Program-made: the position numbers and the translations under genes
IMG/VR virus record: IMGVR_UViG_3300036781_000418
Location: 278,592-342,591 of that record
Reading direction: 5' to 3' (one strand)
Length of the DNA stretch: 64,000 bases
Shown here: piece after piece, positions 8,000-44,362 of the stretch
Layout of the letters: every line of letters begins with the position of its first letter
Position numbering within the stretch: position 1 is the stretch's first letter
Notes under the pieces: model-generated
The model's database searches: none
The model's input: the letters and a program-made list of their open reading frames with translations, nothing else
Told to the model about the DNA's origin: nothing

Positions 8000-8670
8000 A
8001 ACGCATCATTGAACTACGCGCCGCTGAAGGCGGCGAAGACAGCAAGCTGTTCGTCAAGGACCTTGCTTCAGCCTACATCAAGCTCGCGCAACGCGAAGGC
8101 TGAACTACCCGCCTGGTGGACGATCGCCTGGGAGAGCTTCACCTTGAAGTCTCCGGCGACGATCTATCAGAGCTCAACAACGAGCCAGGCGGACACCGTA
8201 TCCAGCGCATCCCACCGACCGAGCGTCGTGGCCGTGTGCACTCCTCCACCGTCACGGTGGCGGTCATTGATCCCAAGGAACGACGTACCATCGAGTACAA
8301 CGACCGAGACTTCAAACTCGAGTGGTACTCTGGAACGGGGGCGGGCGGTCAACACCGCAACAAGCACCAGAACTCCTGTCGCCTTACGCACCTCCAAACC
8401 AAGGAGGTCGCCACTGCCCAGTGCCGTTCACGTGAGAACTCCTTCGCCCAAGCGCAGTCCGAGCTGTTGGCAAGGCTGAACGGCTCGGCCCTCAGCTCCG
8501 ACCTAAAGGAAGTTGCCCAGTTCCGTAAGGAGCAGGTCGGTTCAGGCGAACGTGGTGACAAGATCCGCACGTACCGCTTCCAAGACGACCAGGTGAAGGA
8601 CCACCGTACGGGGCAGACCGCCGTGTTGTCCAAGGTCATGCAAGGTAACTTCAGGTTGCTTTGGTCCTAA
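7996..8670 (+). CDS. Class I peptide chain release factor (RF1-type, lacking domain 1) with in-frame TGA at 8101-8103
   Basis: ATG 7996 gives MKRIIELRAAEGGEDSKLFVKDLASAYIKLAQREG*TTRLVDD..., in frame with track ORF 8116..8670. That ORF has HRIQRIPPTE (PxT), GAGGQHRNK and KIRTY. Confidence 0.85.
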
Positions 8671-8712
8671 GCTGGGGACGCTGACGATGTGGCGACGACC
8701 TATGATCATAGT

Positions 8713-9579
8713 ATGAACGCCCTCATCATCGGCTCCACCGCCATGTACCACTGGTTCCCAGACGCTCGGAAGCCGAAGGACCTTGACCTCCTAACGCCCG
8801 CCAAGATCGTCGGGAACCATGGTGACGTGTGCGTAGTCGATGCCCAGTGGCACGAGGCCGCTGAGGCAATCATGATGGCGTCGACCGACAAAGTCTTCGC
8901 CACGCCTAACGTCCTGCTGACCCTGAAGGTAGCCCACGCCCACTGGAACGTTGAGCACCAGAAGACGCTGTTCGACATCAAGTTCCTGCAGGACAAGGGT
9001 GCTGAGGTCATCGAGCACCTGTACCTTGCCCTGATTCCAGTGTTCACTGCGCGGTACGGCAAGAACAAGGTTACCGTGAACAAGCCCATGAGGGAGTTCT
9101 TTACGGACGCGGTGCCACGTGCGTACGACCATGAGTGGCTGCACGAGAAGTTGGCCTTTCACGGTCGCCCAATCCACGAACGACTGCGTCCAGACATGGG
9201 CAACGTCTGGTGCTCACGTGAACTGTTCGAGCGACTGTCCTACGATGACCAGTGCGCGTGCGCCCTTGAAGAGATCTTGGTGACCGCCGTTGAACGGCGA
9301 AACCTAACCACACACAGCAAACGAAGTGAACTGCTCTCCGCTGTGTACCTCGCTCACCACAAGCTCTGCACCACCATGGCGTCAGGCTGGTTCGCGCGGT
9401 TCAACATCGAGCACCACCACGAACTTTTGATTAACCGGAGAATCCAATGGATGACACATCTAACCCAAGCCTTGTCGAGCTTGCCACCACCGACGCCCGG
9501 GGCTTTCTATCAGCCTTCCTTGAACGACAAAGTGAAGGTCGATGCAACACCCATGACGTCTACCAGTTCCAGCACCTGA
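8713..9579 (+). CDS. Phage nucleotidyltransferase-fold protein
   Basis: LIIGSTA...PKDLDLL (GS...DxD) N-terminal motif. Confidence 0.55.
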   Translation: MNALIIGSTAMYHWFPDARKPKDLDLLTPAKIVGNHGDVCVVDAQWHEAAEAIMMASTDKVFATPNVLLTLKVAHAHWNVEHQKTLFDIKFLQDKGAEVIEHLYLALIPVFTARYGKNKVTVNKPMREFFTDAVPRAYDHEWLHEKLAFHGRPIHERLRPDMGNVWCSRELFERLSYDDQCACALEEILVTAVERRNLTTHSKRSELLSAVYLAHHKLCTTMASGWFARFNIEHHHELLINRRIQWMTHLTQALSSLPPPTPGAFYQPSLNDKVKVDATPMTSTSSST

Positions 9580-9812: not shown

Positions 9813-9830
9813 GCGGCTGAATCTGTAATA

Positions 9831-9860
9831 AATAGGGGCGCTTTGCCCCTATTCCGTTTT
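9831..9860 (+). terminator. Intrinsic terminator, followed by late promoter TAAATA (9868-9873)
   Basis: AATAGGGGC-GCTTT-GCCCCTATT then CCGTTTT. Confidence 0.55.
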
Positions 9861-9933
9861 CCAGGACTAAATAGAGGATTGATAGACCGCAAGAGATGCA
9901 GTACGAGTCTAGCCGGCATATTGGGAGACATAG

Positions 9934-10821
9934 ATGAAGTTCATCATCGGGCTAGTGTTGGCCCTGGCGCCGCTGCTCATGGCCAACAGCCAGCAGGTCG
10001 TCACAGTTTCGGGCATCGCAGTCCCGCCACACAGCAACGCGCCGCTGTTCACGCTCTACAGCGGCTCACCCAAAGGGGCCTACACCCGCCTCGCCGAAGA
10101 CCTGCAACGGGTCTGTACGAACCTCAACATTCAAATCCAACCAACTGACGGTGCCGTTGCCAACATGAAGGCCCTCTCCGACGAGCAGGTCATTCGTACC
10201 GGGGTCCGCATCGCCTTCGCGCAGCAGGACGTCGTCGTGGCCTTGTCTGGTCAGGGTTACCCAGCGCCGAAGGTCGTCATGCCGCTCTACAACGAGGACG
10301 TAAACGTGCTCGTCAACGTCGGCTCCCACATCGGTTCGTTGAGGGACCTCAACGGCAAGCGAGTCGCGGTCGGTAAGCCTGGTTCCGGCAACTGGCAGAC
10401 CGCCAAGACGATCCGTGAAGAGCTGAAGATCAACTGGATTCCAGTTGAACAGTCCCCAGACGAGTCCATCCTTGGGCTCCTAACCGGTGAGGTGGACGCC
10501 ATGATCCTAACCTCCGGTCACCCAATCAAGCTCTTCTCCGAGCTGAGCGGCAACATGCGTAGCCTCATTACCATGCTGCCAACCACCGAACTCAAGAGCT
10601 ACTCCACCGTCGAGAAGCTCCCAGCGAACACGTATCTTTGGCAACCTACCGAAGTTGAGATGAAGTCGACCAGATCGCTGCTGATCGCCGCTTCAGGCAC
10701 AACTCAAGCCGAGATGAACGAGGTGCTGATGTGCGTCTCGTCCAACAAGGAGGTGCTGAAGAAGCTCGGCCATCCTGCATGGAACCAGGTGACCTTTCCA
10801 ACCACTAAGAGATCCAAGTAA
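9934..10821 (+). CDS. TAXI-family TRAP transporter solute-binding protein (periplasmic)
   Basis: Signal peptide; SGSPKGAY, TDGAVANM, AFAQQD, PLYNEDVNVLV, DLNGKRVAVGKPGSG, GEVDAMI motifs. Confidence 0.85.
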   Translation: MKFIIGLVLALAPLLMANSQQVVTVSGIAVPPHSNAPLFTLYSGSPKGAYTRLAEDLQRVCTNLNIQIQPTDGAVANMKALSDEQVIRTGVRIAFAQQDVVVALSGQGYPAPKVVMPLYNEDVNVLVNVGSHIGSLRDLNGKRVAVGKPGSGNWQTAKTIREELKINWIPVEQSPDESILGLLTGEVDAMILTSGHPIKLFSELSGNMRSLITMLPTTELKSYSTVEKLPANTYLWQPTEVEMKSTRSLLIAASGTTQAEMNEVLMCVSSNKEVLKKLGHPAWNQVTFPTTKRSK

Positions 10822-11523
10822 ATGAGCGACAAGTCCCCACTCGACACCGTCAGCGAGGTGTTCCAGGTTCTTCAGGATATTTCAGACAAGCTGACCATCG
10901 TACGGATCATCACCGTGCTCGTGGTCGGGCTGATGGCGACTGGACTGTCCATGCTGTACGAGAACCGTGCTACCCTGTTTCAGACGGCCTTCGTGCGGGT
11001 GACTGGAGATCCTGAACCAAAGGCGGGCTGGGCCATCTCGGACGAGACTCAGAAGCAGCTCAACAACTTCGTGACGTCCGTCGACCTAGTGAACTTCGTC
11101 ACGGTGGTTGAGGTCGACCTAAAGAAGAACGTCCGTTGGCCGCGCTACGTCTTCTTCGACGACACGGAAGGCCAGCAGACGAAGGACCAGATCCTTGGCG
11201 TCCTGCCGCAGTCCATGTTTGACTACGACCAGAAGAACACGACCCAGATGGTCTCAGTGCTCCAGAACGAGTTCACCTGCGTTCGACTGCAGGACACTAA
11301 CTACCAACGCACCGTGCCAAACCTGGCCAAGAAGGTGCCGATCATCTGCCGCATCGCCATTCCACCGTTCTACAACAAGTTTGCCGGCTACATCGACATT
11401 GGCCTAAACCAAGCCCCAACGAAGTACGAGCTGGATTCTCTACGGATTGAGGCAACTCGACTCGCCGTGGAAATCTACCTCCGTGACGTCGTGAAGAAAC
11501 CGGTCGGTTACCCGCTTAACTGA
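10822..11523 (+). CDS. Single-TM protein with periplasmic GAF-like domain, T4 holin (gp t)-like; paralogue 1
   Basis: N-terminal amphipathic helix, one TM, two Cys, C-terminal CRIAIPPFYNKFAGYI. Confidence 0.5.
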   Translation: MSDKSPLDTVSEVFQVLQDISDKLTIVRIITVLVVGLMATGLSMLYENRATLFQTAFVRVTGDPEPKAGWAISDETQKQLNNFVTSVDLVNFVTVVEVDLKKNVRWPRYVFFDDTEGQQTKDQILGVLPQSMFDYDQKNTTQMVSVLQNEFTCVRLQDTNYQRTVPNLAKKVPIICRIAIPPFYNKFAGYIDIGLNQAPTKYELDSLRIEATRLAVEIYLRDVVKKPVGYPLN

Positions 11524-11546
11524 GCAAATCCAGTCATCCCGGCCCA

Positions 11547-11579
11547 TAGCTCCATAAATATCCTTGTAACTCGGAGCTA
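11547..11579 (+). promoter_or_regulatory. Late promoter (ATAAATA 11554-11560) inside an RBS-sequestering stem
   Basis: TAGCTCC (11547-11553) is complementary to GGAGCTA (11573-11579), which carries the SD. Confidence 0.6.
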
Positions 11580-11581
11580 AC

Positions 11582-12253
11582 ATGGACTACAAGAAGGCAC
11601 TGCCGCTAATCGACAAGTTTCTTGGATGGGTGTCCATCAAGCGCGTGGTCATGCTCGCGCTGATCATCGTGGTGTGCATCACCACCCAGACGATCTTTGA
11701 GAACCGGGCGCAGCTCAGCGAGGGTATCGCGGACCGTGGCAAGGAGCACAACGTGTTCGACGCCCCGATCAAGCTATCGAAGAACTCGGAAGAGGCGATC
11801 AAGAACCTCGTGAACAACCACTCAGAGATCCTGCTGGCGACCGTCATGTCTGTGAACATGCGCGCCCTGCAGCGGACCCCAGTCTTCTTCTACTCTGGCG
11901 ACGCACAGGTCACGAAGATGATTGACGGTCAGCTCTCCCAGCGCACTGGAACCCTCCCAATCTTTACGCACGATGAGAAGGCCGACGGCGAGATCGTCGG
12001 CCTTATGAACGGGGACTTCTCCTGCGTTAAATACTCGGACACCGTGAACGCCTCCATCTTCCCATCGCTGGTCGGGAAGGTAAAGCTGCTCTGCCGTGTT
12101 GGTCTTCCACCGTACAAGGGTAACTTCTCTGGGTACATCTCCTTGCTGGTGATGGACTTGAGCGGTCCGTACAAGGAAGACGAGATCCGCCTTGAGCTTA
12201 CCAAGGTCGCTACCGACATCTACCTGTCCGATGTCGTCGGCAAGCAACGTTAA
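11582..12253 (+). CDS. T4 holin-like single-TM/periplasmic-domain protein; paralogue 2
   Basis: Aligns with 10822..11523: (Y/F)ENRA, F(T/S)CV, CRxxxPP(F/Y)xxxF(A/S)GYI, RxExTxxAxxIYLxDVVxK. Confidence 0.5.
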   Translation: MDYKKALPLIDKFLGWVSIKRVVMLALIIVVCITTQTIFENRAQLSEGIADRGKEHNVFDAPIKLSKNSEEAIKNLVNNHSEILLATVMSVNMRALQRTPVFFYSGDAQVTKMIDGQLSQRTGTLPIFTHDEKADGEIVGLMNGDFSCVKYSDTVNASIFPSLVGKVKLLCRVGLPPYKGNFSGYISLLVMDLSGPYKEDEIRLELTKVATDIYLSDVVGKQR

Positions 12254-12273
12254 GGACAGATAAGGTCCACACC

Positions 12274-12486
12274 ATGCACATGGGAATGATTCCACTTCTA
12301 CTGCTGTTCATTACCGTCATTGGGGTGGTCGGCATCGTGCTGTATCGTACCATCTGGTGCCGCCTGTTTCGCCATCCGACTAACGACCGTCGTGAAGCGG
12401 AGCTTGACTTTGAAGGTCGAGACCGCCGTCGCGGCAACCGCACTGGAACGGCCGCAGACCGCAAGGACACAGTTCCCACGCCCTAA
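12274..12486 (+). CDS. Small membrane protein (one TM, basic tail), possible lysis accessory
   Basis: Hydrophobic N-terminus, Arg-rich C-terminus. Confidence 0.5.
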   Translation: MHMGMIPLLLLFITVIGVVGIVLYRTIWCRLFRHPTNDRREAELDFEGRDRRRGNRTGTAADRKDTVPTP

Positions 12487-12583
12487 ATAGGACTCACGTT
12501 GAATCTAAGGTTCGGGCCAATGTGCAAACATTCGGCCCGAGTTTGATTTGCGCGACTGTATAACACATAGTAGGATAGAACAA

Positions 12584-13039
12584 ATGGAACAACTAGACGA
12601 ACTCCAATATGAAAAGAAGCCACGAGCTGGCCTAATCCCGTACATCATGGGTCAGGATGGGCGGTACCGTTACCTGATGATGATCGCCTCTAACTCGAAG
12701 TTCGGTGGCCCAAGACCAATGATCTCCAAGGGCAAGATTGAGGAGGGTGAGACCCCCTACATCGCCGCGGTTCGCGAGGCCGAGGAGGAACTTGGGTTGA
12801 TCGCGTACAACATGAAGGGAACCCCCGCCCTCCTCACCGAGGAACAGGTCACCCTTCGATCCGGAACTTACTTCTTTACGGTGTACGCCGTGGAGATCTA
12901 CGATCGCTCCCTCTTCAACATGTGGTGTAGCGAGACGGAGTATACGGAGTGGTACACGCTCGACGAATTCCAACAACATGGACGACGCGATCACATCAAG
13001 TTCATCCAACAACTCGAACAACAGCTTAGACAAACCTAA
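12584..13039 (+). CDS. NUDIX hydrolase
   Basis: GKIEEGETPYIAAVREAEEELG Nudix box. Confidence 0.85.
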   Translation: MEQLDELQYEKKPRAGLIPYIMGQDGRYRYLMMIASNSKFGGPRPMISKGKIEEGETPYIAAVREAEEELGLIAYNMKGTPALLTEEQVTLRSGTYFFTVYAVEIYDRSLFNMWCSETEYTEWYTLDEFQQHGRRDHIKFIQQLEQQLRQT

Positions 13040-13052
13040 ATGAGATAGCATA

Positions 13053-13718
13053 ATGGCAAAGGTACTCTTCCTTGACAAATCAGGTCAACCACTTGACTGG
13101 GGCACGTGGCGTGACGCCGTGGAGCACTACGCTAAGGACCACGTGCTGTGGGAACTTGGCGACAAGAACCGTGAGTCGATCACGTTCCGTGGCGGGTTCA
13201 ACTGCAACGGCGATCAGTCAAAGATCTCGGTCGCACCGATCATCGCCTTGAACGGTGAGGCCACGGGTCGTAAGCGCTACAAGATCCCAACCCTGAACAA
13301 CCGGTACCTGTTTGCCCGTGACCGTTGGACCTGCGCGTACTGCGGCTCGACCAACCCCAACGAGTCAAAGCTGTCGTGCGACCACGTCGTGCCGCGTTCC
13401 CGTGGTGGCAAGGACATCTGGGAAAACGTCGTCACCTCCTGCGGTCCATGCAACAACTTCAAGGACAACTGGCTGTTGAGTGAAATTGGGATGGAGCTCA
13501 GGTACGTGCCGTACGTCCCGACACAGGCCGACATCCTGTTCATGGAGTCTCAGGGCATTCTCCCGAGTCAGGCCGAGTACCTGCTGCCGTTCTGCTCCGA
13601 GCGTGCTCGGCTCTCGTTCCAGGGCGTCGCGAACCAAGGTGGTCCCGCGTTGAACCACCTTGAAGAGGCGGCTCGGGCGGCTGGACCTCGTCGTTCGAAG
13701 GCACCGACCCGTAAGTAA
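13053..13718 (+). CDS. HNH endonuclease
   Basis: RDRWTCAYCG...DHVVPRSRGG...WENVVTSCGPCNNFK. Confidence 0.9.
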   Translation: MAKVLFLDKSGQPLDWGTWRDAVEHYAKDHVLWELGDKNRESITFRGGFNCNGDQSKISVAPIIALNGEATGRKRYKIPTLNNRYLFARDRWTCAYCGSTNPNESKLSCDHVVPRSRGGKDIWENVVTSCGPCNNFKDNWLLSEIGMELRYVPYVPTQADILFMESQGILPSQAEYLLPFCSERARLSFQGVANQGGPALNHLEEAARAAGPRRSKAPTRK

Positions 13719-13802
13719 CCTGGATGGTTCCTCCGTAATGGGACCATCTAGACAACTACGGGTCGTCCAACAACGTACAATGGTCGTAACAACTGGTGCA
13801 GC

Positions 13803-14243
13803 ATGATCGATTCAAACAAGGTTCTCGGTGCGGCGATGCTTATCTCGCTCGCCCTTCTCACGCTCGTTGACATTACGGGAACGGGTGGTGTGGTGCGGTT
13901 GGCGGTCAGCTTAGTGGTGTTCCCACTGCTCTCGCTGTTCATCACCTGGCTGTTTGGAATTGTGATGGAGGCGGTCGGGCTTGGACACAAGCTAATGCAG
14001 CCTCCGGTCATGCACGACCTTGAGCCTGAGGTCATCATCGGCGAGTTGGTCGGTCAGTCGACGACGGTGGCTGGTTCGCTCAACGGCGATCCGTTTCCGG
14101 AGTGGGTCGACATTCTCCAAGCGAAGACGGGTGATACCCTTCGGTACTACTACCACTCCGTGGAGATTCCAAACTACATGTACCCAGTTGGGTACATCGT
14201 CATGACCTTCGGCAAGGCGCACCTCGTCTACGCTGGCACCTGA
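13803..14243 (+). CDS. Hypothetical membrane protein
   Basis: Two N-terminal TM segments; TACAAT box upstream. Confidence 0.55.
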   Translation: MIDSNKVLGAAMLISLALLTLVDITGTGGVVRLAVSLVVFPLLSLFITWLFGIVMEAVGLGHKLMQPPVMHDLEPEVIIGELVGQSTTVAGSLNGDPFPEWVDILQAKTGDTLRYYYHSVEIPNYMYPVGYIVMTFGKAHLVYAGT

Positions 14244-14364: not shown

Positions 14365-14805
14365 ATGTCCACACTCATCACGACCATCAAAGTTGACCAA
14401 CTGGCCGCCCGCAAGGCCCGCGAGCAAGGTAAGACCGCGCTCCTCACCACGTTGATCGGCGAAGCTGACACGAAGGCGAAGAATGAAGGGACCACCCTGC
14501 TGTCTGATGAGAAGACGCTCAAGCTCGTGACGACGTTCATCTCCAACCTACGTGACAACCTGAAGCTCATCGAGCCAAACTCGATCGCTGGCATTCAGGC
14601 GACGCAGGAGATCGAGATCCTTGAAAAGTACGTGCCCACGCAGCTCACTGAAGATGAGCTTGTGGCGAAGGTCAAGGCCATCCTTGTGGATTCGCCCGAG
14701 GTCCCTAAGATCGGCGTCCTGATGGGCGCCCTCAAACAACAACTTACCCCAGGCACCTACGACGGAAAGCTCTTGGCCGACGTCGTAAAGCGCCTGATCA
14801 GTTAA
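14365..14805 (+). CDS. GatB/YqeY domain protein
   Basis: IKVDQLAARKAR...LLTTLIGE...EIEILEKYVPTQLTEDEL...IGVLMGALK. Confidence 0.85.
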   Translation: MSTLITTIKVDQLAARKAREQGKTALLTTLIGEADTKAKNEGTTLLSDEKTLKLVTTFISNLRDNLKLIEPNSIAGIQATQEIEILEKYVPTQLTEDELVAKVKAILVDSPEVPKIGVLMGALKQQLTPGTYDGKLLADVVKRLIS

Positions 14806-15099: not shown

Positions 15100-16731
15100 A
15101 TGTCTGCATCAACTTACACCGACTTTGCCCAGTCACAGAACCCAGCCAACGCCGTGACCCACCAGACGCAGCCGATCCCAGGCCGCGAAGGTGAGATGGC
15201 CAAGAACAACGCGGGTGGCTTCACCTTCGCGCTTGACCAGTGGGGCGTGTTCGACCGCTTCCTGTTGATCGGTTCGGAAACCCCAGGCTACTACGTCGGT
15301 ACCAAGGAGCAGACCGCTGAAAGCTTCAAGAGCACCATCGCGTGCGTCAAGGCCGACGGCCTCCGTGCGATCAACCGCCTGAAGGAAATCTCGCTCGCTG
15401 GTCGCGCACCGAAGAACGACCCAGCCGTCGTGGCGCTCGCCTTGGCGGCCATCTACGGTGACGCCACGGTCAAGGCCGCCGCGTACGAAGCCCTGCCACA
15501 GGTCGCACGTACCGGCACCTGGCTGTTCCAGTTCGTCTCCATCGTCGACTCGCTCGGCAAGTGGAACGCGGCGACCAAGCGTGGTGTGGCCAACTGGTAC
15601 ACCAGCAAGAACCTCGACAAGCTGGCCATCCAGCTCCTGAAGTACCAGTCCCGCAACAACTGGTCGCACCGCGACGTGCTGCGTCTGGCCCACATCAAGC
15701 CGACGGAACAGAACACCACGTTGTTCAAGTACGTGGTCAAGGGTGCCGACGGTATGGTGCAAGGCGACTTGCTGCCGAACCTCGTCATCGACTTCGAACG
15801 CCTGAAGCGCGCCACCACCAAGGCTGAGGTCTTGGCCGTCGTCAACGGCAACAAGGACGTCACGTGGGAAATGGTGCCGACGGTGTGGCACAAGGACAAG
15901 GACGTCATGCTGGCGTTGCTGCCGAACATGGGCCTGACCGCGATCATCCGCAAGCTTGGTATCCTCACCATGCACGGCGTCATCACGCAAGGCGACGGTC
16001 TGAAGCACGTCACCGACGTGCTGACCAATCCTGAGCAACTGACGCGCTCGCGCATTCACCCGCTCTCGGTGCTCCAGGCCTTCAAGCAGTACAGCCAAGG
16101 TCGCGGTGAAAAGGGCTCCAATACCTGGTCACCGGTCAACGACGTGAAGAACGCCCTTGACATGGCCTTCTACAGCGCGTTCCAGAACGTGCCAGGTACT
16201 GGTGGCTCCGTGTTCCTCGGTGTCGACTGCTCGGGCTCGATGTTCGGTGCTCCTGTCAACGGCTCGCCAAACTTGGTGGCCGCTGAAGTCGCCGCGGTGA
16301 CCGCCCTGGCGATCGCCAAGCAGCAGAAGAACTACTTCATCGGTGGCTTCAACACCACGATGGCGCCGATCGGCATCGACCCGGATATGCGCCTTGACAA
16401 GGCGTTGGAGGTGATTCGTCGCTTCCCATGGGGCGGCACGAACTGCGCCCTGCCGATGATCTACGCCGCGCAGAAGAAGATGGAGGTCGACACGTTCGTG
16501 ACCATCACGGACAATGAGACCTACGCTGGTTCGATCCAACCGTCTCAGGCCCTGCGCGACTACCGCAAGCAGTTCAAGAAGCCGAAGGCCTCGAACATCG
16601 TCATCGGTACGTCCGTCAGCAAGTTCACGATCGCGGATCCGAAGGACCCGTACCAACTGGACATCGCCGGTTTCGACTCGGCCGCTCCGGTTCTGATCGC
16701 TGAGTTCATGAAGGCTTCAGCCGCGACCTGA
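15100..16731 (+). CDS. rsr: Ro60/Rsr TROVE-domain RNA-binding protein with vWA domain
   Basis: NNAGGFTF, RFLLIGSE, KYQSRNNWSHRDVLRLAH, RIHP, DCSGSM (MIDAS), GGTNCALPM, TDNET, GFDS. Confidence 0.95.
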   Translation: MSASTYTDFAQSQNPANAVTHQTQPIPGREGEMAKNNAGGFTFALDQWGVFDRFLLIGSETPGYYVGTKEQTAESFKSTIACVKADGLRAINRLKEISLAGRAPKNDPAVVALALAAIYGDATVKAAAYEALPQVARTGTWLFQFVSIVDSLGKWNAATKRGVANWYTSKNLDKLAIQLLKYQSRNNWSHRDVLRLAHIKPTEQNTTLFKYVVKGADGMVQGDLLPNLVIDFERLKRATTKAEVLAVVNGNKDVTWEMVPTVWHKDKDVMLALLPNMGLTAIIRKLGILTMHGVITQGDGLKHVTDVLTNPEQLTRSRIHPLSVLQAFKQYSQGRGEKGSNTWSPVNDVKNALDMAFYSAFQNVPGTGGSVFLGVDCSGSMFGAPVNGSPNLVAAEVAAVTALAIAKQQKNYFIGGFNTTMAPIGIDPDMRLDKALEVIRRFPWGGTNCALPMIYAAQKKMEVDTFVTITDNETYAGSIQPSQALRDYRKQFKKPKASNIVIGTSVSKFTIADPKDPYQLDIAGFDSAAPVLIAEFMKASAAT

Positions 16732-16769
16732 TCGTCGTACATCCCCAACGCGCACGAGCGCGTATAATG

Positions 16770-16796
16770 AAAGGACGCTAACCAAGCGTCCTTTTT
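16770..16796 (+). terminator. Intrinsic terminator after Ro60
   Basis: AAAGGACGCT-AACCA-AGCGTCCTTT followed by TT. Confidence 0.6.
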
Positions 16797-16804
16797 CGCA
16801 TCCT

Positions 16805-16936
16805 ATGACCATCACCCGACTTCCTCTTGACTCGGCGAACCGCATGATTCGCGTCGGCTTCGGCCTCAACGACGGCCGCTGGTTTGCACGTGTCGACCTG
16901 TGGTGGGTCGGGTTCCGACTGACCGGCAACCGGTGA
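16805..16936 (+). CDS. Small hypothetical protein (43 aa)
   Basis: MTITRLPLDSANRMIRVGFGLNDGRWFARVDLWWVGFRLTGNR; TATAAT at 16763. Confidence 0.4.
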   Translation: MTITRLPLDSANRMIRVGFGLNDGRWFARVDLWWVGFRLTGNR

Positions 16937-16952
16937 GGCCGAGGGCACACGA

Positions 16953-17183
16953 ATGACGACGACCTTAGAGCTCCACAAGATCAAACGATCGATGCACCAC
17001 GACGTCGTTCGGTCCTTCCAGGCAATGCTCAGCGAGTGCGACGTCAAGGCCGTTGACAAGCTTGACCCCGTACTGATGAAGTCCGTCGAAGGTTGGTACA
17101 AGCAGTGGAACCGTATGACGGGCGACGACGCGCAACCTTCATGGATCCGACCATGTTCTCGAACCTCATCAACGACTCTATGA
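16953..17183 (+). CDS. Hypothetical protein
   Basis: 76-aa ORF in operon orientation. Confidence 0.45.
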   Translation: MTTTLELHKIKRSMHHDVVRSFQAMLSECDVKAVDKLDPVLMKSVEGWYKQWNRMTGDDAQPSWIRPCSRTSSTTL

Positions 17184-17899
17184 TCAAAGACCACCTCACC
17201 CACACTGAGAAGCTGAAGCTCTCGGCCAGGTACTGGCTGCTCGGGGCCGCTACGTTCGACAAGCGGTACTACAAGTGCCTTGACGCGTTGGAGATCGCCA
17301 TCGGCCACCATGACGGCGTCCGCAACGACGGCACCGACGAGATCGCCCACATGATCGGCGTCTTCCAACTGCTGCGGACGATGCACAACCACCTGCTTGA
17401 TCCGGTGAGCGCGTACATCGAGGCGCTCCTCCATGACTGCATCGAGGATCCGAACCAGCTGACGAAGAAGTTCATCGCCCCGTCCGAGATTCAAGCGCAG
17501 TTTGGCAGCCAGATCCACGACGAGCTGCTGATCATGTCGAAGGAGATCCTCGGCCAGAAGAACCCTCAGTTTCTGCTGAGCAACGTCTTCCTCAACGTGA
17601 ACACGAGCGTGGTGAAACCAGGTGACCGTGACAACAACGTCGCGTCGATGTACGGCACGTTCAAGCCCGCTCGCCTGGCACGGTACATCAAGGAGACCAA
17701 GGAGGAGTACTTCGCCGGTCTCAAGGTTGCGCGTCGCAAGTTCCCTGAGCAGGAGCCCATCTATGAAAACATCAAGCTCTCCCTCACCCACAAGCTCCAG
17801 CTTATCGAGCACCTCGCCAAGAAAGACGAAGAGTCAAGTGCAGCTGGACGGGGAGAGGTTCCTGAAGCTAGCGGCACTAATTCACGCGGGCCTGGGTGA
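17141..17899 (+). CDS. HD-domain RelA/SpoT-type hydrolase (small alarmone hydrolase/Mesh1-like)
   Basis: HDGVRNDG..EIAH, ALLHDCIED, VKPGDRDNN motifs. Confidence 0.8.
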   Translation: MDPTMFSNLINDSMIKDHLTHTEKLKLSARYWLLGAATFDKRYYKCLDALEIAIGHHDGVRNDGTDEIAHMIGVFQLLRTMHNHLLDPVSAYIEALLHDCIEDPNQLTKKFIAPSEIQAQFGSQIHDELLIMSKEILGQKNPQFLLSNVFLNVNTSVVKPGDRDNNVASMYGTFKPARLARYIKETKEEYFAGLKVARRKFPEQEPIYENIKLSLTHKLQLIEHLAKKDEESSAAGRGEVPEASGTNSRGPG

Positions 17900-18556: not shown

Positions 18557-18977
18557 CGACGGTTGCTGGTGGAACGCCCGTTGGGAACGGGCTGTCAGAC
18601 ACGACCATCGTCACGGTCGGCGTGATCATGGAGATGGTCGGCGTGCCAAGCGTGACGGCGTCCGTCGTCCACGTGAAGCTGGACGTAGCGTCCAGCACGC
18701 TGATCGGCGAGAGCAGGACAGTTGACATCGTCACCGTCGAGCTGGCCATCGCGCCCTTAGTCGACACTTCAACCTGCTGCAACAGCCCGCCAGACGCGTT
18801 GGCGTTCGGTCCAAGCGACTCCAAACTGAGCGTGTACAGTTCAGAGGTCTTGTTGGCGCGTGTGTCCTTCACCGTGATGTTGTAGGTCGCCGTCGCCGTC
18901 GTCAACGCGATGCGCGTCATAAACTTGGCCGCACCCACGGTGTCGGTTGAGAAAACGTAGTTTACGTCGTTAGCCAT
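18534..18977 (-). CDS. Probable structural protein
   Basis: Thr/Ser/Val-rich; follows the late gene 18980..20761. Confidence 0.55.
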   Translation of the reverse strand: MANDVNYVFSTDTVGAAKFMTRIALTTATATYNITVKDTRANKTSELYTLSLESLGPNANASGGLLQQVEVSTKGAMASSTVTMSTVLLSPISVLDATSSFTWTTDAVTLGTPTISMITPTVTMVVSDSPFPTGVPPATVVKQTVVA

Positions 18978-18979
18978 GA

Positions 18980-20761
18980 TCAGTCCTTGGATTGGTCATC
19001 GTTGTGGGTCCAGATGTACTTACCTGGAGCGTCGCCTGCGGCGTAGCATTGGTTTTCACAGAAGATCGTCGCAACGTAACCCATGCCAGCGTACGTGACA
19101 CTGACGATTTCCTCCCAACGGAAGCCGTTGTCGTCTTGGACTGGCAGCTTCTTGTTGAGCACGTTGCTGGCGAAGGTCGATGAACCGTCTTCAAGCGTGA
19201 CCGGAGTTGAGTCTGAGCAGGTCAACGTGATGCCTGAGCGCGAGATCAGCTTAACCAACGGCTGCAGTGAGGTACGGTTCGAGATGACGGTACCTGGCAC
19301 CGTCGTCGTGCGGTCAGTTGAGAGCAGGGAAAGCTCATCACCAACATCAACCTCACCAGCCACCTTACCAGACGGTAGGTAGGCTTGAACTGAGACTGAA
19401 CCACCGCCTCCTCCACCACCACTGCTCACAAAGGCCGCGGTGTTGATGCCGAAGTAGGAGTTACCAGCCGTCGTAGTTTCAAGACCGGTGACGTTCACCT
19501 GTCCACCAGCTGCGCCGAAGGCGCCGTTCACGAGGGAGTGCTTGACCCATGAGAGCGTTGGTGTCGTGTTCGCGCTAGCGAGCTTCGCGCCCACCACGTA
19601 GTAGGAGGCCGTCGTAAGGTCCGCGCTACCGACGACGTAGCTGCAGTAGATGTACAGGTTGTTCGCGTTGTCGGTGGAGATGTGTGGGACTCGGAAGCCA
19701 TCGCCAGAGGTGCCTGAACCGACCACCCCAAGTGATGGAACTGCAAGTGACCGTGACCAGGTAATGCCACCCGTCGTGATCTTGGCGATGTAGAGCTGGT
19801 CGTTGGCGTGTGGCGTGGTACCAGTAGTTGCACCAGACGAATAAGCCGTGACGTAGTAGTAGTTGCCCGCTGAGTCCACCGCGTGTTGAACACCGCGGAA
19901 GTGGTTGCCACTGTAGCTGAACGTTTGGTTAGCGACGTTCTGCGAGGTGTTGACGTCGATCGAGGCGGTGTTGACCAGCGCGCCGTTGGCGGGGTTCAGC
20001 TTCTGGAAGCTGCCAGTTTGGCTGACAATTGAACCGCCATGTGAGGACCCGTACAACGTGAACGAGTAGAGGTTGTCACTAGCGTCGACGGACAGGTGAC
20101 CTGAAGCCAACAGAATTGCTGACACTCCAGAGATCGTCGAGACGTAGCGCTTGTTCCAAGTGATGTTGCCAAACGAGTCCAGCTTCATGATGCAGAACGA
20201 ACCTTCAACTACACGACCCGCGTAGTAGGACACGTAGATGTTGTTGGCCGAGTCAGTGACGATACTCGTCACGACTGGAAACTGAAATTCATTGTTCGGG
20301 CTGCTTGGGTAGACCCAGTGCGTGATGCCGTTGCGCCAAGCCAACGTGCTGCCGTCGGCCGAGTACTTCCAGACGCCAAGGCCAGACTTTGACGTTGATC
20401 CGGCACCAGCCGTGTAGGTCACGTCGGTCTGGTAGAAAGTAGCAACGATGATGTTACCCGCCGAGTCGGTCGTCGTAAAGCTGGAGGCATCCAAGTAGTT
20501 CGGGTTGGCTTGCGTGCCGACCGTGTAGGTGGCCGGGTTGTTCATGCTCGACGAGAGCCAACGAGTCGTGGCCTGAGGCGCGCCGTAGAAGTTGAACAGT
20601 GAGAGCGGACCGCTGGTCGGAATCGCACCGCTTACGCCCGTCGTACCTGACGGGACGAACGTGCCACCGGCGTAGTAGTCCTCAAGCGAGGGCGAGGTGT
20701 TCCCGCCGAACTGCGTCTTCAGGTCGTTGATTGAGATGGGACCGGAGGTCTGGAGGGTCAT
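18980..20761 (-). CDS. Tail-associated beta-rich protein with C-terminal Hint domain
   Basis: MTLQTSGPISINDL..FGG..YY N-terminus and DSAGN repeats. Poly-Gly linker, then SVSV...VDVGD...LTCSDSTP...WEEIVSV...WTHN. Late promoter at 20791-20796. Confidence 0.7.
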   Translation of the reverse strand: MTLQTSGPISINDLKTQFGGNTSPSLEDYYAGGTFVPSGTTGVSGAIPTSGPLSLFNFYGAPQATTRWLSSSMNNPATYTVGTQANPNYLDASSFTTTDSAGNIIVATFYQTDVTYTAGAGSTSKSGLGVWKYSADGSTLAWRNGITHWVYPSSPNNEFQFPVVTSIVTDSANNIYVSYYAGRVVEGSFCIMKLDSFGNITWNKRYVSTISGVSAILLASGHLSVDASDNLYSFTLYGSSHGGSIVSQTGSFQKLNPANGALVNTASIDVNTSQNVANQTFSYSGNHFRGVQHAVDSAGNYYYVTAYSSGATTGTTPHANDQLYIAKITTGGITWSRSLAVPSLGVVGSGTSGDGFRVPHISTDNANNLYIYCSYVVGSADLTTASYYVVGAKLASANTTPTLSWVKHSLVNGAFGAAGGQVNVTGLETTTAGNSYFGINTAAFVSSGGGGGGGSVSVQAYLPSGKVAGEVDVGDELSLLSTDRTTTVPGTVISNRTSLQPLVKLISRSGITLTCSDSTPVTLEDGSSTFASNVLNKKLPVQDDNGFRWEEIVSVTYAGMGYVATIFCENQCYAAGDAPGKYIWTHNDDQSKD

Positions 20762-43930: not shown

Positions 43931-44362
43931 ATGAAAACCAAATTTTCCGAAAAACTCACCTTCATCGGCATGATCGACTGGTTCGATTTCCCGCTGGCCT
44001 CGCACTCGCAGGACCATGGAACCGGTCAGAACTACGTGATGGTCTGGTGCGATGAATATTCCAAGGTGATCGAGGAAATGTCGCTGCCCTTTGTGCAGTG
44101 GATGTCCATCCCCGTCACGCCCGACCAGCTGACGAAGCTGCTGAACGCGGACTACACGCAGGCCATGACGCTCCTTGAGCTCCTTGAAACTGGCGTGACG
44201 TTCTACCTCTGTGAGGGTCAGACGTACATCTACGACTCCATCACCGTGGGCGAGCCGATGACGTTGGCCACCATGCCCAAAGACCTCGTGCCGATGCCTG
44301 GTTCCTACATGGACCTGCGCGCCTCGATCGCGGCGGACAAAGCCAAGGGAGCAATCCAATGA
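43931..44362 (+). CDS. Hypothetical protein
   Basis: 143-aa ORF with RBS. Confidence 0.55.
   Translation: MKTKFSEKLTFIGMIDWFDFPLASHSQDHGTGQNYVMVWCDEYSKVIEEMSLPFVQWMSIPVTPDQLTKLLNADYTQAMTLLELLETGVTFYLCEGQTYIYDSITVGEPMTLATMPKDLVPMPGSYMDLRASIAADKAKGAIQ

What the first reader, a model, noticed from the sequence alone, without database searches (positions are those of the whole stretch)
9868..12486. Late operon: periplasmic TAXI solute-binding protein plus two T4-holin-like paralogues (possible metabolite-sensing lysis control)
Seen: late TAAATA box, then a secreted TAXI solute-binding protein with no TRAP membrane subunit in the window. It abuts (TAA-ATG) a single-TM protein with a two-Cys periplasmic domain. 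A paralogue follows with its own late promoter and RBS-occluding stem, then a small TM peptide. Known: T4 holin T has this topology with a periplasmic GAF-like domain bound by the secreted antiholin RI during lysis inhibition, and T4 gene e uses an RBS-occluding hairpin. Inference: the orphan binding protein may act as a ligand-responsive antiholin or sensor that tunes lysis timing to nutrients or lysate signals. The holin assignment is tentative.
Basis: inference. Interest (0 to 1): 0.75.

Follow-up and report, generated by a model that had tools for sequence, protein, structure and literature searches.

The report
Late T-like holin pair with binding protein
A soil jumbo phage carries a late-expressed four-gene module in which two paralogous membrane proteins look like the phage T4 lysis-timing protein (holin T) and are translationally coupled to a secreted nutrient-binding protein, so cell-bursting time may be tuned by an outside signal, though that link is unproven.

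Summary
Window 9868-12545 is one late transcription unit: a TAAATA box, a secreted TAXI solute-binding protein (SBP), two paralogous single-pass membrane proteins (A, B), and a 70-aa membrane peptide, lying between two stable hairpins.

TAAATA is a real late promoter motif. It occurs 111 times in the 342.6-kb genome, in front of virion genes and the endolysin.

A and B belong to a large unannotated phage family (phrog_31287; 380 clusters, no Pfam match). The domain beyond the membrane helix, predicted periplasmic, is a GAF fold with two invariant cysteines. It matches the T4 holin T periplasmic domain at Z 13, but no better than ordinary GAF domains, and no sequence homology to T is detectable.

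The strongest functional evidence is positional. In Edwardsiella phages GF-2 and Edno5 a family member sits in the holin slot (Q, member, endolysin, spanins). T4-like phage S13 has a member but no T.

SBP-A-B order is conserved in 7 of 12 related loci. However, the SBP is lost in close relatives and occurs alone in other large phages. The genome has no TRAP permease.

The holin reading is supported. The SBP-as-antiholin idea remains untested, because complex prediction gave no answer.

The parts
9829..9853 (+). Stable GC-rich hairpin (AATAGGGGC / GCCCCTATT) with a TAAATA at 9829-9834 forming its start, followed by a short T-run. Probable terminator of the upstream unit.
   Evidence: Fold gives -16.3 kcal/mol, z -3.3, 1 of 200 shuffles as stable. 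It fails the T-run rule of the simple terminator scan. The same TAAATA-plus-hairpin design recurs across the genome.
9868..9873 (+). TAAATA late-promoter box for the module. It lies 60 nt upstream of the SBP start codon, which is longer than the usual 20-35 nt.
   Evidence: A TAAATA box precedes the first gene of the module in 10 of 12 related loci.
9934..10821 (+). Secreted TAXI-family solute-binding protein (SBP), 295 aa. It has a signal peptide and two cysteines (C61, C267) conserved among phage copies. A GGGAG ribosome-binding site lies at 9923-9927.
   Evidence: Pfam NMT1_3 at 7.5e-17; TIGR02122 at 8.3e-24; PDB 1US4 at 1.5e-10. The TAXI-invariant residues are retained in alignment A4.
10822..11523 (+). 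Paralogue A, 233 aa. It has an N-terminal amphipathic helix, one transmembrane helix (about residues 24-46), and a periplasmic GAF-like domain with invariant C153 and C176. Its ATG abuts the SBP stop codon.
   Evidence: AF2 model pLDDT 80.5. Z 13.0 to 6psk_T. Matches phrog_31287. The A-type orthologues form a clade with 99/98 support.
11547..11579 (+). Second TAAATA box (11555-11560) sitting in the loop of a 7-bp stem (11547-11553 pairing with 11573-11579) that covers the GGAG of B. A transcript started at this box would lack the 5' arm of the stem.
   Evidence: -12 kcal/mol, z -1.5, so weak; RNA from 11566 onward is unstructured. A TAAATA box lies in the A-B spacer in 8 of 12 loci.
11582..12253 (+). 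Paralogue B, 223 aa, with the same architecture as A. Invariant C148 and C171, plus C32 within the transmembrane helix.
   Evidence: 29% identity to A. AF2 model pLDDT 92.4. Z 13.0-13.1 to T4 T chains at ranks 2-4.
12274..12486 (+). 70-aa single-pass membrane peptide. Four N-terminal residues are followed by one helix and then an Arg-rich, probably cytoplasmic, tail carrying a Trp-Cys motif just after the helix.
   Evidence: No family match. Analogous peptides follow B in 6 of 7 SBP-bearing loci and in 0 of 5 SBP-less loci.
12484..12541 (+). Third TAAATA box (12484-12489, overlapping the stop codon of the peptide gene), followed by a strong hairpin at 12511-12541 and a T-rich tail. Probable end of the unit and promoter for the NUDIX gene.
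   Evidence: -21.8 kcal/mol, z -2.6..

Best explanation
The locus is a late transcription unit of a soil jumbo myovirus whose core is a pair of anciently duplicated class-III-type lysis-control membrane proteins, A and B.

Each protein is anchored N-in/C-out by one helix. Each exposes a disulfide-bonded GAF-like domain in the periplasm, which is the design of T4 holin T. Late in infection they accumulate in the inner membrane, probably as a hetero-oligomer, or as a holin plus a paralogous antiholin. At a set time they open holes that release the soluble GH108 endolysin, which is encoded about 135 kb away. This scattering of lysis genes resembles T4.

The secreted TAXI binding protein and the small membrane peptide are dispensable accessories that travel together. 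They most likely modulate the A/B periplasmic and membrane parts, and so the timing of lysis, rather than feeding a transporter.

**Shown here:** gene anatomy, the late motif, paralogy, fold, family size, synteny, and the position of family members in lysis cassettes.

**Inferred:** membrane topology, the disulfide, hole formation, hetero-oligomerisation, and any action of the SBP or the peptide on A/B.
For: - **Family size and annotation.** The family has 380 representative clusters. All 104 of 108 scanned members that matched any PHROG matched phrog_31287, and none matched Pfam.
- **Lysis-cassette position.** GF-2 gp77 and Edno5 gp70 are family members (E about 1e-22 against the family profile). 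They lie between the Q antiterminator and a Phage_lysozyme endolysin that has no signal-anchor segment, followed by Rz/Rz1 spanins. No other membrane ORF is present in that cassette.
- **Second lysis-linked context.** The MW202825 member lies two genes upstream of a lysozyme.
- **T4-like phage without T.** Straboviridae phage S13 has a member (E 1.6e-30) and no PF11031 match.
- **Fold.** A and B match the T4 T periplasmic domain at Z 13.0-13.1 across nearly the whole domain.
- **Language-model neighbours.** The ESM atlas places A near clusters that carry PF11031.
- **Late expression.** TAAATA precedes virion genes, the endolysin, the module and B.
- **Need for a holin.** The endolysin (GH108 + PG_binding_3) has no export signal, so it needs a hole-forming holin. 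No membrane ORF lies next to it.
- **Old, retained duplication.** The A then B order is kept in all 12 loci, and the A-type clade has 99/98 support.
- **SBP coupling.** SBP-A junctions are abutting or overlapping in 7 loci.
- **No permease.** The genome has no DctM.
Against: - There is no detectable sequence homology to T. hhalign probability is 1.9-2.9%. The only weak, in-register signal lies in the N-terminal helix plus transmembrane segment, where composition bias is expected.
- The fold match does not separate T from ordinary GAF sensor domains.
- One related genome has five family copies, which is odd for a holin.
- In MW202825 a 168-aa multi-pass membrane protein sits directly before the lysozyme and could be the holin there.
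- A and B are about 135 kb from the endolysin, and no spanins were located.
- For the accessories: complex prediction gave no answer (median 0.25 against a mark of 0.32). The SBP is missing from loci whose A and B are sisters of SBP-bearing ones. SBP homologues occur in RsoM2USA and Motura, which lack the family.
Confidence: 0.5

Rival explanations
1. The SBP is an auxiliary metabolic gene. It is secreted late and docks onto the host's own TAXI-TRAP permease to raise uptake of a dicarboxylate or amino acid. This would parallel the orphan PstS of cyanophages working with the host PstCAB transporter (my own knowledge). On this view its adjacency to A/B is operon packaging without functional contact.
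For: - The TAXI signature residues are retained.
- Similar SBPs stand alone in RsoM2USA, Motura and RHph_I1_18.
- RsoM2USA and Motura have no A/B-family member.
- A/B occur without the SBP in 5 of 12 loci.
- There is no evidence of binding.
Against: - SBP-A translational coupling (abutting or overlapping stop and start codons) is kept across relatives of 40-50% identity and 42-58% GC.
- The small membrane peptide co-occurs with the SBP: 6 of 7 SBP loci against 0 of 5 SBP-less loci.
- Expression comes from a late promoter shared with a lysis-type gene pair.
- The host and its permeases are unknown.
Confidence: 0.25
2. A and B are periplasmic GAF-type sensor or receptor proteins unrelated to hole formation. 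Candidate roles include superinfection exclusion, envelope remodelling, or a receptor that reads the ligand state of the SBP. The Gofduovirus members would then be a separate functional offshoot of the family.
For: - The fold is as close to sensory GAF domains as to T.
- The family is expanded to five copies in one genome.
- Only a short cytoplasmic segment is present, and the genes are far from the endolysin.
- Identity to GF-2 gp77 is low, roughly 20-25%.
Against: - Transcription is late, which is not expected for exclusion functions.
- There is no output domain.
- Family members lie in or beside lysis cassettes in two independent small-phage lineages.
- The T-less T4-like phage S13 has a member.
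- Language-model features are nearer to the holin T family than to GAF.
Confidence: 0.15
3. The 70-aa peptide, which has one membrane helix and a highly charged tail, is the actual hole-former. A, B and the SBP would all be its regulators.
For: Small size, one strong transmembrane helix and a charged C-terminal tail are common holin traits (general knowledge of holins). The gene is in the same late unit.
Against: - The peptide is absent from all five SBP-less loci that still carry A and B.
- It is absent from the GF-2 cassette, where the family member is the only membrane candidate.
- It matches no family.
Confidence: 0.07

Closest known systems
Phage T4 holin T (gpt; Pfam PF11031; class III, termed 'IIIa' in PMC12894885) with its antiholins RI (periplasmic) and RIII (cytoplasmic)
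   Same: - About 220 aa, with a short N-terminal cytoplasmic helix, a single N-in/C-out transmembrane helix, and a roughly 150-residue periplasmic alpha/beta (GAF-like) domain containing a cysteine pair.
- The fold superposes at Z 13 over almost the whole T domain.
- Late promoter of the T4 type (TAAATA here, TATAAATA in T4).
- Lysis genes are scattered across the genome.
- A secreted periplasmic protein is encoded alongside, as RI is for T.
   Different: - No detectable sequence or profile homology.
- From the sequences and predicted secondary structure, the cysteine pair appears to link strands beta3 and beta4, whereas in T it links beta4 to the last helix (C175-C207, my own knowledge). This is inference.
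- Two retained paralogues instead of one gene.
- The secreted partner is a 295-aa TAXI binding protein, not the 97-aa RI.
- No function has been tested.
TAXI-family TRAP solute-binding proteins (TIGR02122 / PF16868; for example Thermus GluBP, PDB 1US4/1US5)
   Same: Sequence family membership, a signal peptide, and conserved family-invariant residues.
   Different: - About 30-50 residues shorter than its cellular relatives.
- No permease gene anywhere in the genome.
- Translationally coupled to a single-pass membrane protein.
- Carries a phage-specific cysteine pair.
phiKZ holin gp142 (class IIIb) with its lysis regulator gp143 (PMC12894885)
   Same: A jumbo-phage single-pass N-in/C-out holin encoded together with a dedicated protein that shifts the triggering time.
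   Different: In phiKZ the large domain and its regulator are cytoplasmic, and the genes lie in a compact lysis cassette. Here the large domain and the candidate regulator are periplasmic, and the endolysin is distant.
T4 gene e translational control by an RBS-sequestering hairpin, relieved on late transcripts that start inside the hairpin (my own knowledge)
   Same: A late promoter box lies inside the loop of a stem that pairs with the Shine-Dalgarno sequence of B. The promoter-proximal transcript would lack the 5' arm.
   Different: The stem is only 7 bp, is not more stable than shuffled controls (z -1.5), and is not clearly conserved in relatives.

Membership tests
Phage_holin_T (PF11031, T4 gpt family) | Sequence match to the family profile | tested here: not met
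   - No Pfam hit for A or B at E<0.1, none in the genome, and none in 108 family members.
- hhalign probability is 1.9-2.9% against T-family alignments.
- The best HMM score is 13.9 bits and is confined to the N-terminal helix plus transmembrane segment.
Phage_holin_T (PF11031, T4 gpt family) | Single N-in/C-out transmembrane helix with a large periplasmic C-terminal domain | tested here: met
   - One hydrophobic segment in each protein.
- AF2 models show a long N-terminal helix followed by a globular domain.
- Lys-rich N-terminal extensions in homologues and an invariant cysteine pair in the C-domain favour N-in/C-out.
- Topology is predicted, not measured.
Phage_holin_T (PF11031, T4 gpt family) | Periplasmic domain with the fold of the T C-terminal domain (PDB 6PSK, 6PX4, 6PXE) | tested here: met
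   Z 13.0 for A and 13.0-13.1 for B, with 137-140 of 142-145 residues aligned. The match is not specific, because generic GAF domains score Z 13.6-11.
Phage_holin_T (PF11031, T4 gpt family) | Timed hole formation that releases a soluble endolysin | not testable with these tools
   Only indirect evidence exists. Family members occupy the holin slot in GF-2 and Edno5. The endolysin of this genome has no export signal.
Phage_holin_T (PF11031, T4 gpt family) | Late expression | tested here: met
   TAAATA boxes lie before the module and before B. The motif precedes virion genes and the endolysin. This rests on the motif only, because no RNA data were found.
TAXI-TRAP transporter solute-binding subunit (TIGR02122 / PF16868) | Sequence match to the family | tested here: met
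   PF16868 at 7.5e-17, above its cut-off. TIGR02122 at 8.3e-24, 84.0 bits, just under the 84.35 cut-off. PDB TAXI proteins at 1e-10 to 1e-7.
TAXI-TRAP transporter solute-binding subunit (TIGR02122 / PF16868) | Works with a cognate TRAP membrane permease encoded nearby | tested here: not met
   No DctM (PF06808) match at E<=1 in the complete 342,591-bp genome. A host permease cannot be excluded.
TAXI-TRAP transporter solute-binding subunit (TIGR02122 / PF16868) | Binds a small-molecule ligand | not testable with these tools
   Family-invariant residues are retained. No ligand was inferred.
Periplasmic antiholin (functional class of T4 RI) | Secreted protein that binds the periplasmic domain of the holin | tested here: inconclusive
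   Secretion is predicted from the signal peptide. Complex prediction of the SBP with A+B gave run scores of 0.39, 0.00 and 0.25, a median of 0.25 below the 0.32 mark. The tool's verdict was 'no answer'.
GAF domain (PF01590 and relatives) | Sequence match to GAF profiles | tested here: not met
   No GAF Pfam hit in A, B or 108 relatives. The fold is GAF-like.

The most novel reading that the evidence does not exclude
A secreted solute-binding protein acts as a ligand-gated periplasmic antiholin. Together with a small membrane peptide, it docks on the GAF-like domains of a heteromeric T-type holin. The phage would thereby set its lysis time by an extracellular metabolite such as a nutrient, a lysate product or a density cue. 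This would be a lysis-inhibition circuit analogous to T4 RI-T but built from a transporter component.
Probability: 0.2. Interest if true: 0.9.

Novelty: new variant of a known kind. Interest (0 to 1): 0.62.

Why it matters

This locus points to a much larger, unannotated family with the same architecture and fold. The family has 380 clusters at 50% identity and is found in lambdoid phages, T4-like phages and many uncultured jumbo phages. If these proteins are holins, they fill the missing-holin gap for many large phages and give new material for studying how periplasmic domains time lysis.

The conserved coupling to an orphan solute-binding protein gives a concrete, testable candidate for metabolite-sensing control of lysis. 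That mode of control has not been described.

Tried and rejected
- **DNA similarity.** A search of the region against isolate phages found nothing.
- **Endolysin hunt by Pfam family.** Phage_lysozyme, SLT and PG_binding_1 searches of the genome were all empty. The endolysin was found only through a PHROG scan of ORFs downstream of TAAATA boxes.
- **Homology to T.** The following were all negative or insignificant: profile against T4 T alone, profile against PDB sequences, profile-profile against 32 and 120 T homologues, and reciprocal HMM searches.
- **Related loci.** The search for related loci with the broad alignment failed for lack of conserved stretches. The narrower alignment worked.
- **Complex prediction.** Those rows were left out. 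The accepted job gave no answer.
- **Small peptide elsewhere.** I checked whether the SBP-plus-small-peptide pairing extends to RsoM2USA. The ORF after its SBP is not a membrane peptide.
- **Promoter and terminator scan.** It found no sigma-70-type promoter, and it did not flag the two flanking hairpins because their T-runs are short.
- **Sequencing runs.** Only one soil DNA run holds the region and no RNA run does, so transcript ends could not be examined.
- **Literature.** Searches found no description of this family, of phage TAXI proteins, or of SBP antiholins.
Full report
**Source and setting.** The window is the last 64 kb of a complete 342,591-bp viral record with direct terminal repeats and GC 57%. 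The only sequencing run holding the region is a soil metagenome DNA run. PHROG matches to tail sheath, tail tube, baseplate wedge and long tail fibre proteins mark it as a jumbo myovirus.

**Anatomy.** Four co-directional genes lie between two stable hairpins.
- The hairpins are at 9829-9853 (z -3.3) and 12511-12541 (z -2.6).
- The first gene (9934-10821) encodes a TAXI solute-binding protein (SBP) with a signal peptide.
- A (10822-11523) starts at the base after the SBP stop codon.
- B (11582-12253) follows A.
- A 70-aa peptide gene (12274-12486) follows B.
- A and B are paralogues: 29% identity, E 2e-31.
- Each has one hydrophobic helix after a short N-terminal helix, and two cysteines that are invariant in 108 relatives.
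- The 70-aa peptide has one N-terminal membrane helix and an Arg-rich tail.

**The promoter motif is real and late.**
- TAAATA occurs 13 times in the window against 3 expected and 111 times in the genome.
- It usually lies 20-35 nt before an ATG with a Shine-Dalgarno sequence.
- Sixty ORFs downstream of it include head decoration, prohead protease, head-tail adaptor, tail tube, tail sheath, tail fibre and baseplate proteins, and the endolysin.
- Boxes precede the module (9868) and B (11555), and a third overlaps the stop codon of the peptide gene (12484).
- The same layout recurs in relatives with GC from 32% to 58%: a box before the first gene in 10 of 12 loci, and a box in the A-B spacer in 8 of 12.

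**The stem over the B ribosome-binding site.** A 7-bp stem (11547-11553 pairing with 11573-11579) holds the box in its loop and pairs with the GGAG of B. A transcript started at the box would be free of it. However, the stem is no more stable than shuffled sequence (z -1.5). I treat this as a plausible but unproven echo of T4 gene e control.

**What A and B are.**
- A word-indexed search found only 15 relatives.
- An exhaustive profile search found 380 clusters at 50% identity, nearly all 210-230 aa.
- Of 108 members scanned, 104 match phrog_31287 (function unknown) and none matches any Pfam family. NCBIfam is also silent.
- AF2 models (pLDDT 80.5 and 92.4) show a long N-terminal helix followed by an alpha/beta domain with GAF topology.
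- Against the PDB, GAF domains and the T4 holin T periplasmic domain share the top ranks. T scores Z 13.0 for A at rank 3, and Z 13.0-13.1 for B at ranks 2-4. It aligns over 137-140 of 142-145 residues. Generic GAF domains score Z 13.6 down to 11.

**Sequence methods find no homology to T**.
- A weak in-register signal covers the N-terminal helix and the transmembrane segment (best 13.9 bits). It may be compositional.
- A language-model feature search puts A closer to clusters in which 23% of members carry PF11031 (0.97, 209 of 256 features) than to GAF clusters (0.89, 161). This is a lead towards distant kinship, not proof.

**Functional evidence from position.**
- The family profile recognises Edwardsiella phage GF-2 gp77 and Edno5 gp70 (E about 1e-22), MW202825 (3e-28) and Cronobacter phage S13_076 (1.6e-30).
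- In GF-2 and Edno5 the gene lies after the Q antiterminator and a roughly 380-nt gap. It overlaps the start of a Phage_lysozyme endolysin that has no signal-anchor segment, and is followed by an i-spanin with an embedded lipoprotein o-spanin. No other membrane ORF is present. That is the lambdoid holin slot.
- S13 is a T4-like Straboviridae phage with a member but no PF11031 match at E<=1.
- In MW202825 the member lies two genes before a lysozyme, but a 168-aa multi-pass membrane protein lies directly before the lysozyme. There the member may be a regulator or a second holin.

**The endolysin of this phage.**
- It is a 191-aa GH108 + PG_binding_3 protein at genome 152841-153416 with its own TAAATA box.
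- It has no export signal and no membrane neighbours, and lies about 135 kb from the module.
- So a hole-forming holin is needed and is encoded elsewhere, as in T4.

**Synteny.**
- Twelve related loci all keep two family genes in tandem.
- The first-position genes form a clade with 99/98 support, and the second-position genes are more divergent. This fits an old duplication with both copies retained, which suggests a hetero-oligomer or a holin-antiholin pair.
- The SBP precedes A, with abutting or overlapping stop and start codons, in 7 of the 12 loci.
- It is absent from L006, L009, L018, L025 and L026. L006 (no SBP) is the sister of L017 (SBP) in both the A and B trees, so the SBP is gained or lost easily.
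- A small single-pass peptide follows B in 6 of 7 SBP-bearing loci and in none of the 5 others. The SBP and the peptide therefore look like a co-travelling accessory pair. This conclusion rests on few and related genomes.
- SBP homologues stand alone in RsoM2USA, Motura and RHph_I1_18. RsoM2USA and Motura have no family member.
- One relative has five family copies.

**SBP role.**
- The genome has no TRAP permease, and the SBP keeps the TAXI-invariant residues.
- Prediction of the SBP with A+B gave run scores of 0.39, 0.00 and 0.25. The tool's verdict was 'no answer', so this is neither support nor refutation.
- The antiholin idea therefore rests on conserved coupling, shared late expression, periplasmic co-location and the T4 RI analogy.
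- The main rival is an auxiliary uptake protein that uses a host permease.

[quoted passage not shown] The family here has the class IIIa design without gpt sequence membership and has a far wider distribution. I found no paper describing it, nor any describing phage TAXI proteins or SBP antiholins.

**Verdict.**
- The holin-like reading of A and B is supported by architecture, fold, late expression and family members sitting in lysis cassettes. My confidence is about 0.6 for a lysis-control role.
- Membership in the T family by sequence fails.
- The SBP and peptide as lysis modulators are plausible but untested, at about 0.25-0.3.
- I rate the finding as a new variant of a known kind, of moderate-to-high interest.

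Noticed in passing
window 9826-9853; also genome positions near 44168, 104912, 118102, 160812, 239702 and 252885: A TAAATA box recurs as the start of a GC-rich hairpin of the form TAAATAGGGG...CCCCTATT. This looks like a composite terminator/promoter element placed between genes.
   Followed up: partly
window 8116-8670 (+): A 184-aa ORF carries PCRF and RF-1 domains and a GGQ motif, so the phage encodes a release-factor-like or peptidyl-tRNA-hydrolase-like protein.
   Followed up: no
window 12548-13718; L006, L007, L014-L018, L026: A NUDIX hydrolase and an HNH endonuclease lie downstream of the module and are conserved across relatives.
   Followed up: partly
L006 8231-9316; L026 5738-6829; L002 5932-7242: A saccharopine-dehydrogenase / homospermidine-synthase-like gene directly follows B in two SBP-less loci. 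An annotated homospermidine synthase directly follows the stand-alone SBP in Achromobacter phage Motura. A possible polyamine link was not explored.
   Followed up: no
record of L014 (G001): 12628-14009, 16722-17213, 18742-19311, 272736-273371: One related 311-kb phage record carries five copies of the A/B family.
   Followed up: no
L007 upstream of 9102; genome positions near 254741, 255693 and 257463: Sequences that look like tRNA 3' ends (GGTTCGAATCC...CCA) lie immediately before TAAATA boxes, suggesting tRNA genes interleaved with late promoters. ARAGORN was not run.
   Followed up: no
L020 3896-3961 (Edwardsiella phage GF-2): The family member gp77 has an in-frame ATG 21 codons upstream of the annotated start. 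This may be a dual-start arrangement like lambda S107/S105.
   Followed up: no
G000:C1:51812-52252 (-), outside the window: A second match to endolysin family phrog_315 (E 2.2e-34) lies in a 546-aa frame reported with two in-frame stop codons. It may be a virion-associated lysin domain or a broken gene.
   Followed up: no
window 9934-10821; alignment A4: All phage SBP copies share two cysteines (C61 and C267 in the window protein). The first is not at that position in the cellular TAXI relatives, which suggests a phage-specific disulfide.
   Followed up: no
window 14365-14805 (+) and 8689-9579 (+): The flanking genes are a GatB/YqeY-like protein (phrog_1460) and a DUF7275/DUF7277 protein.
   Followed up: no
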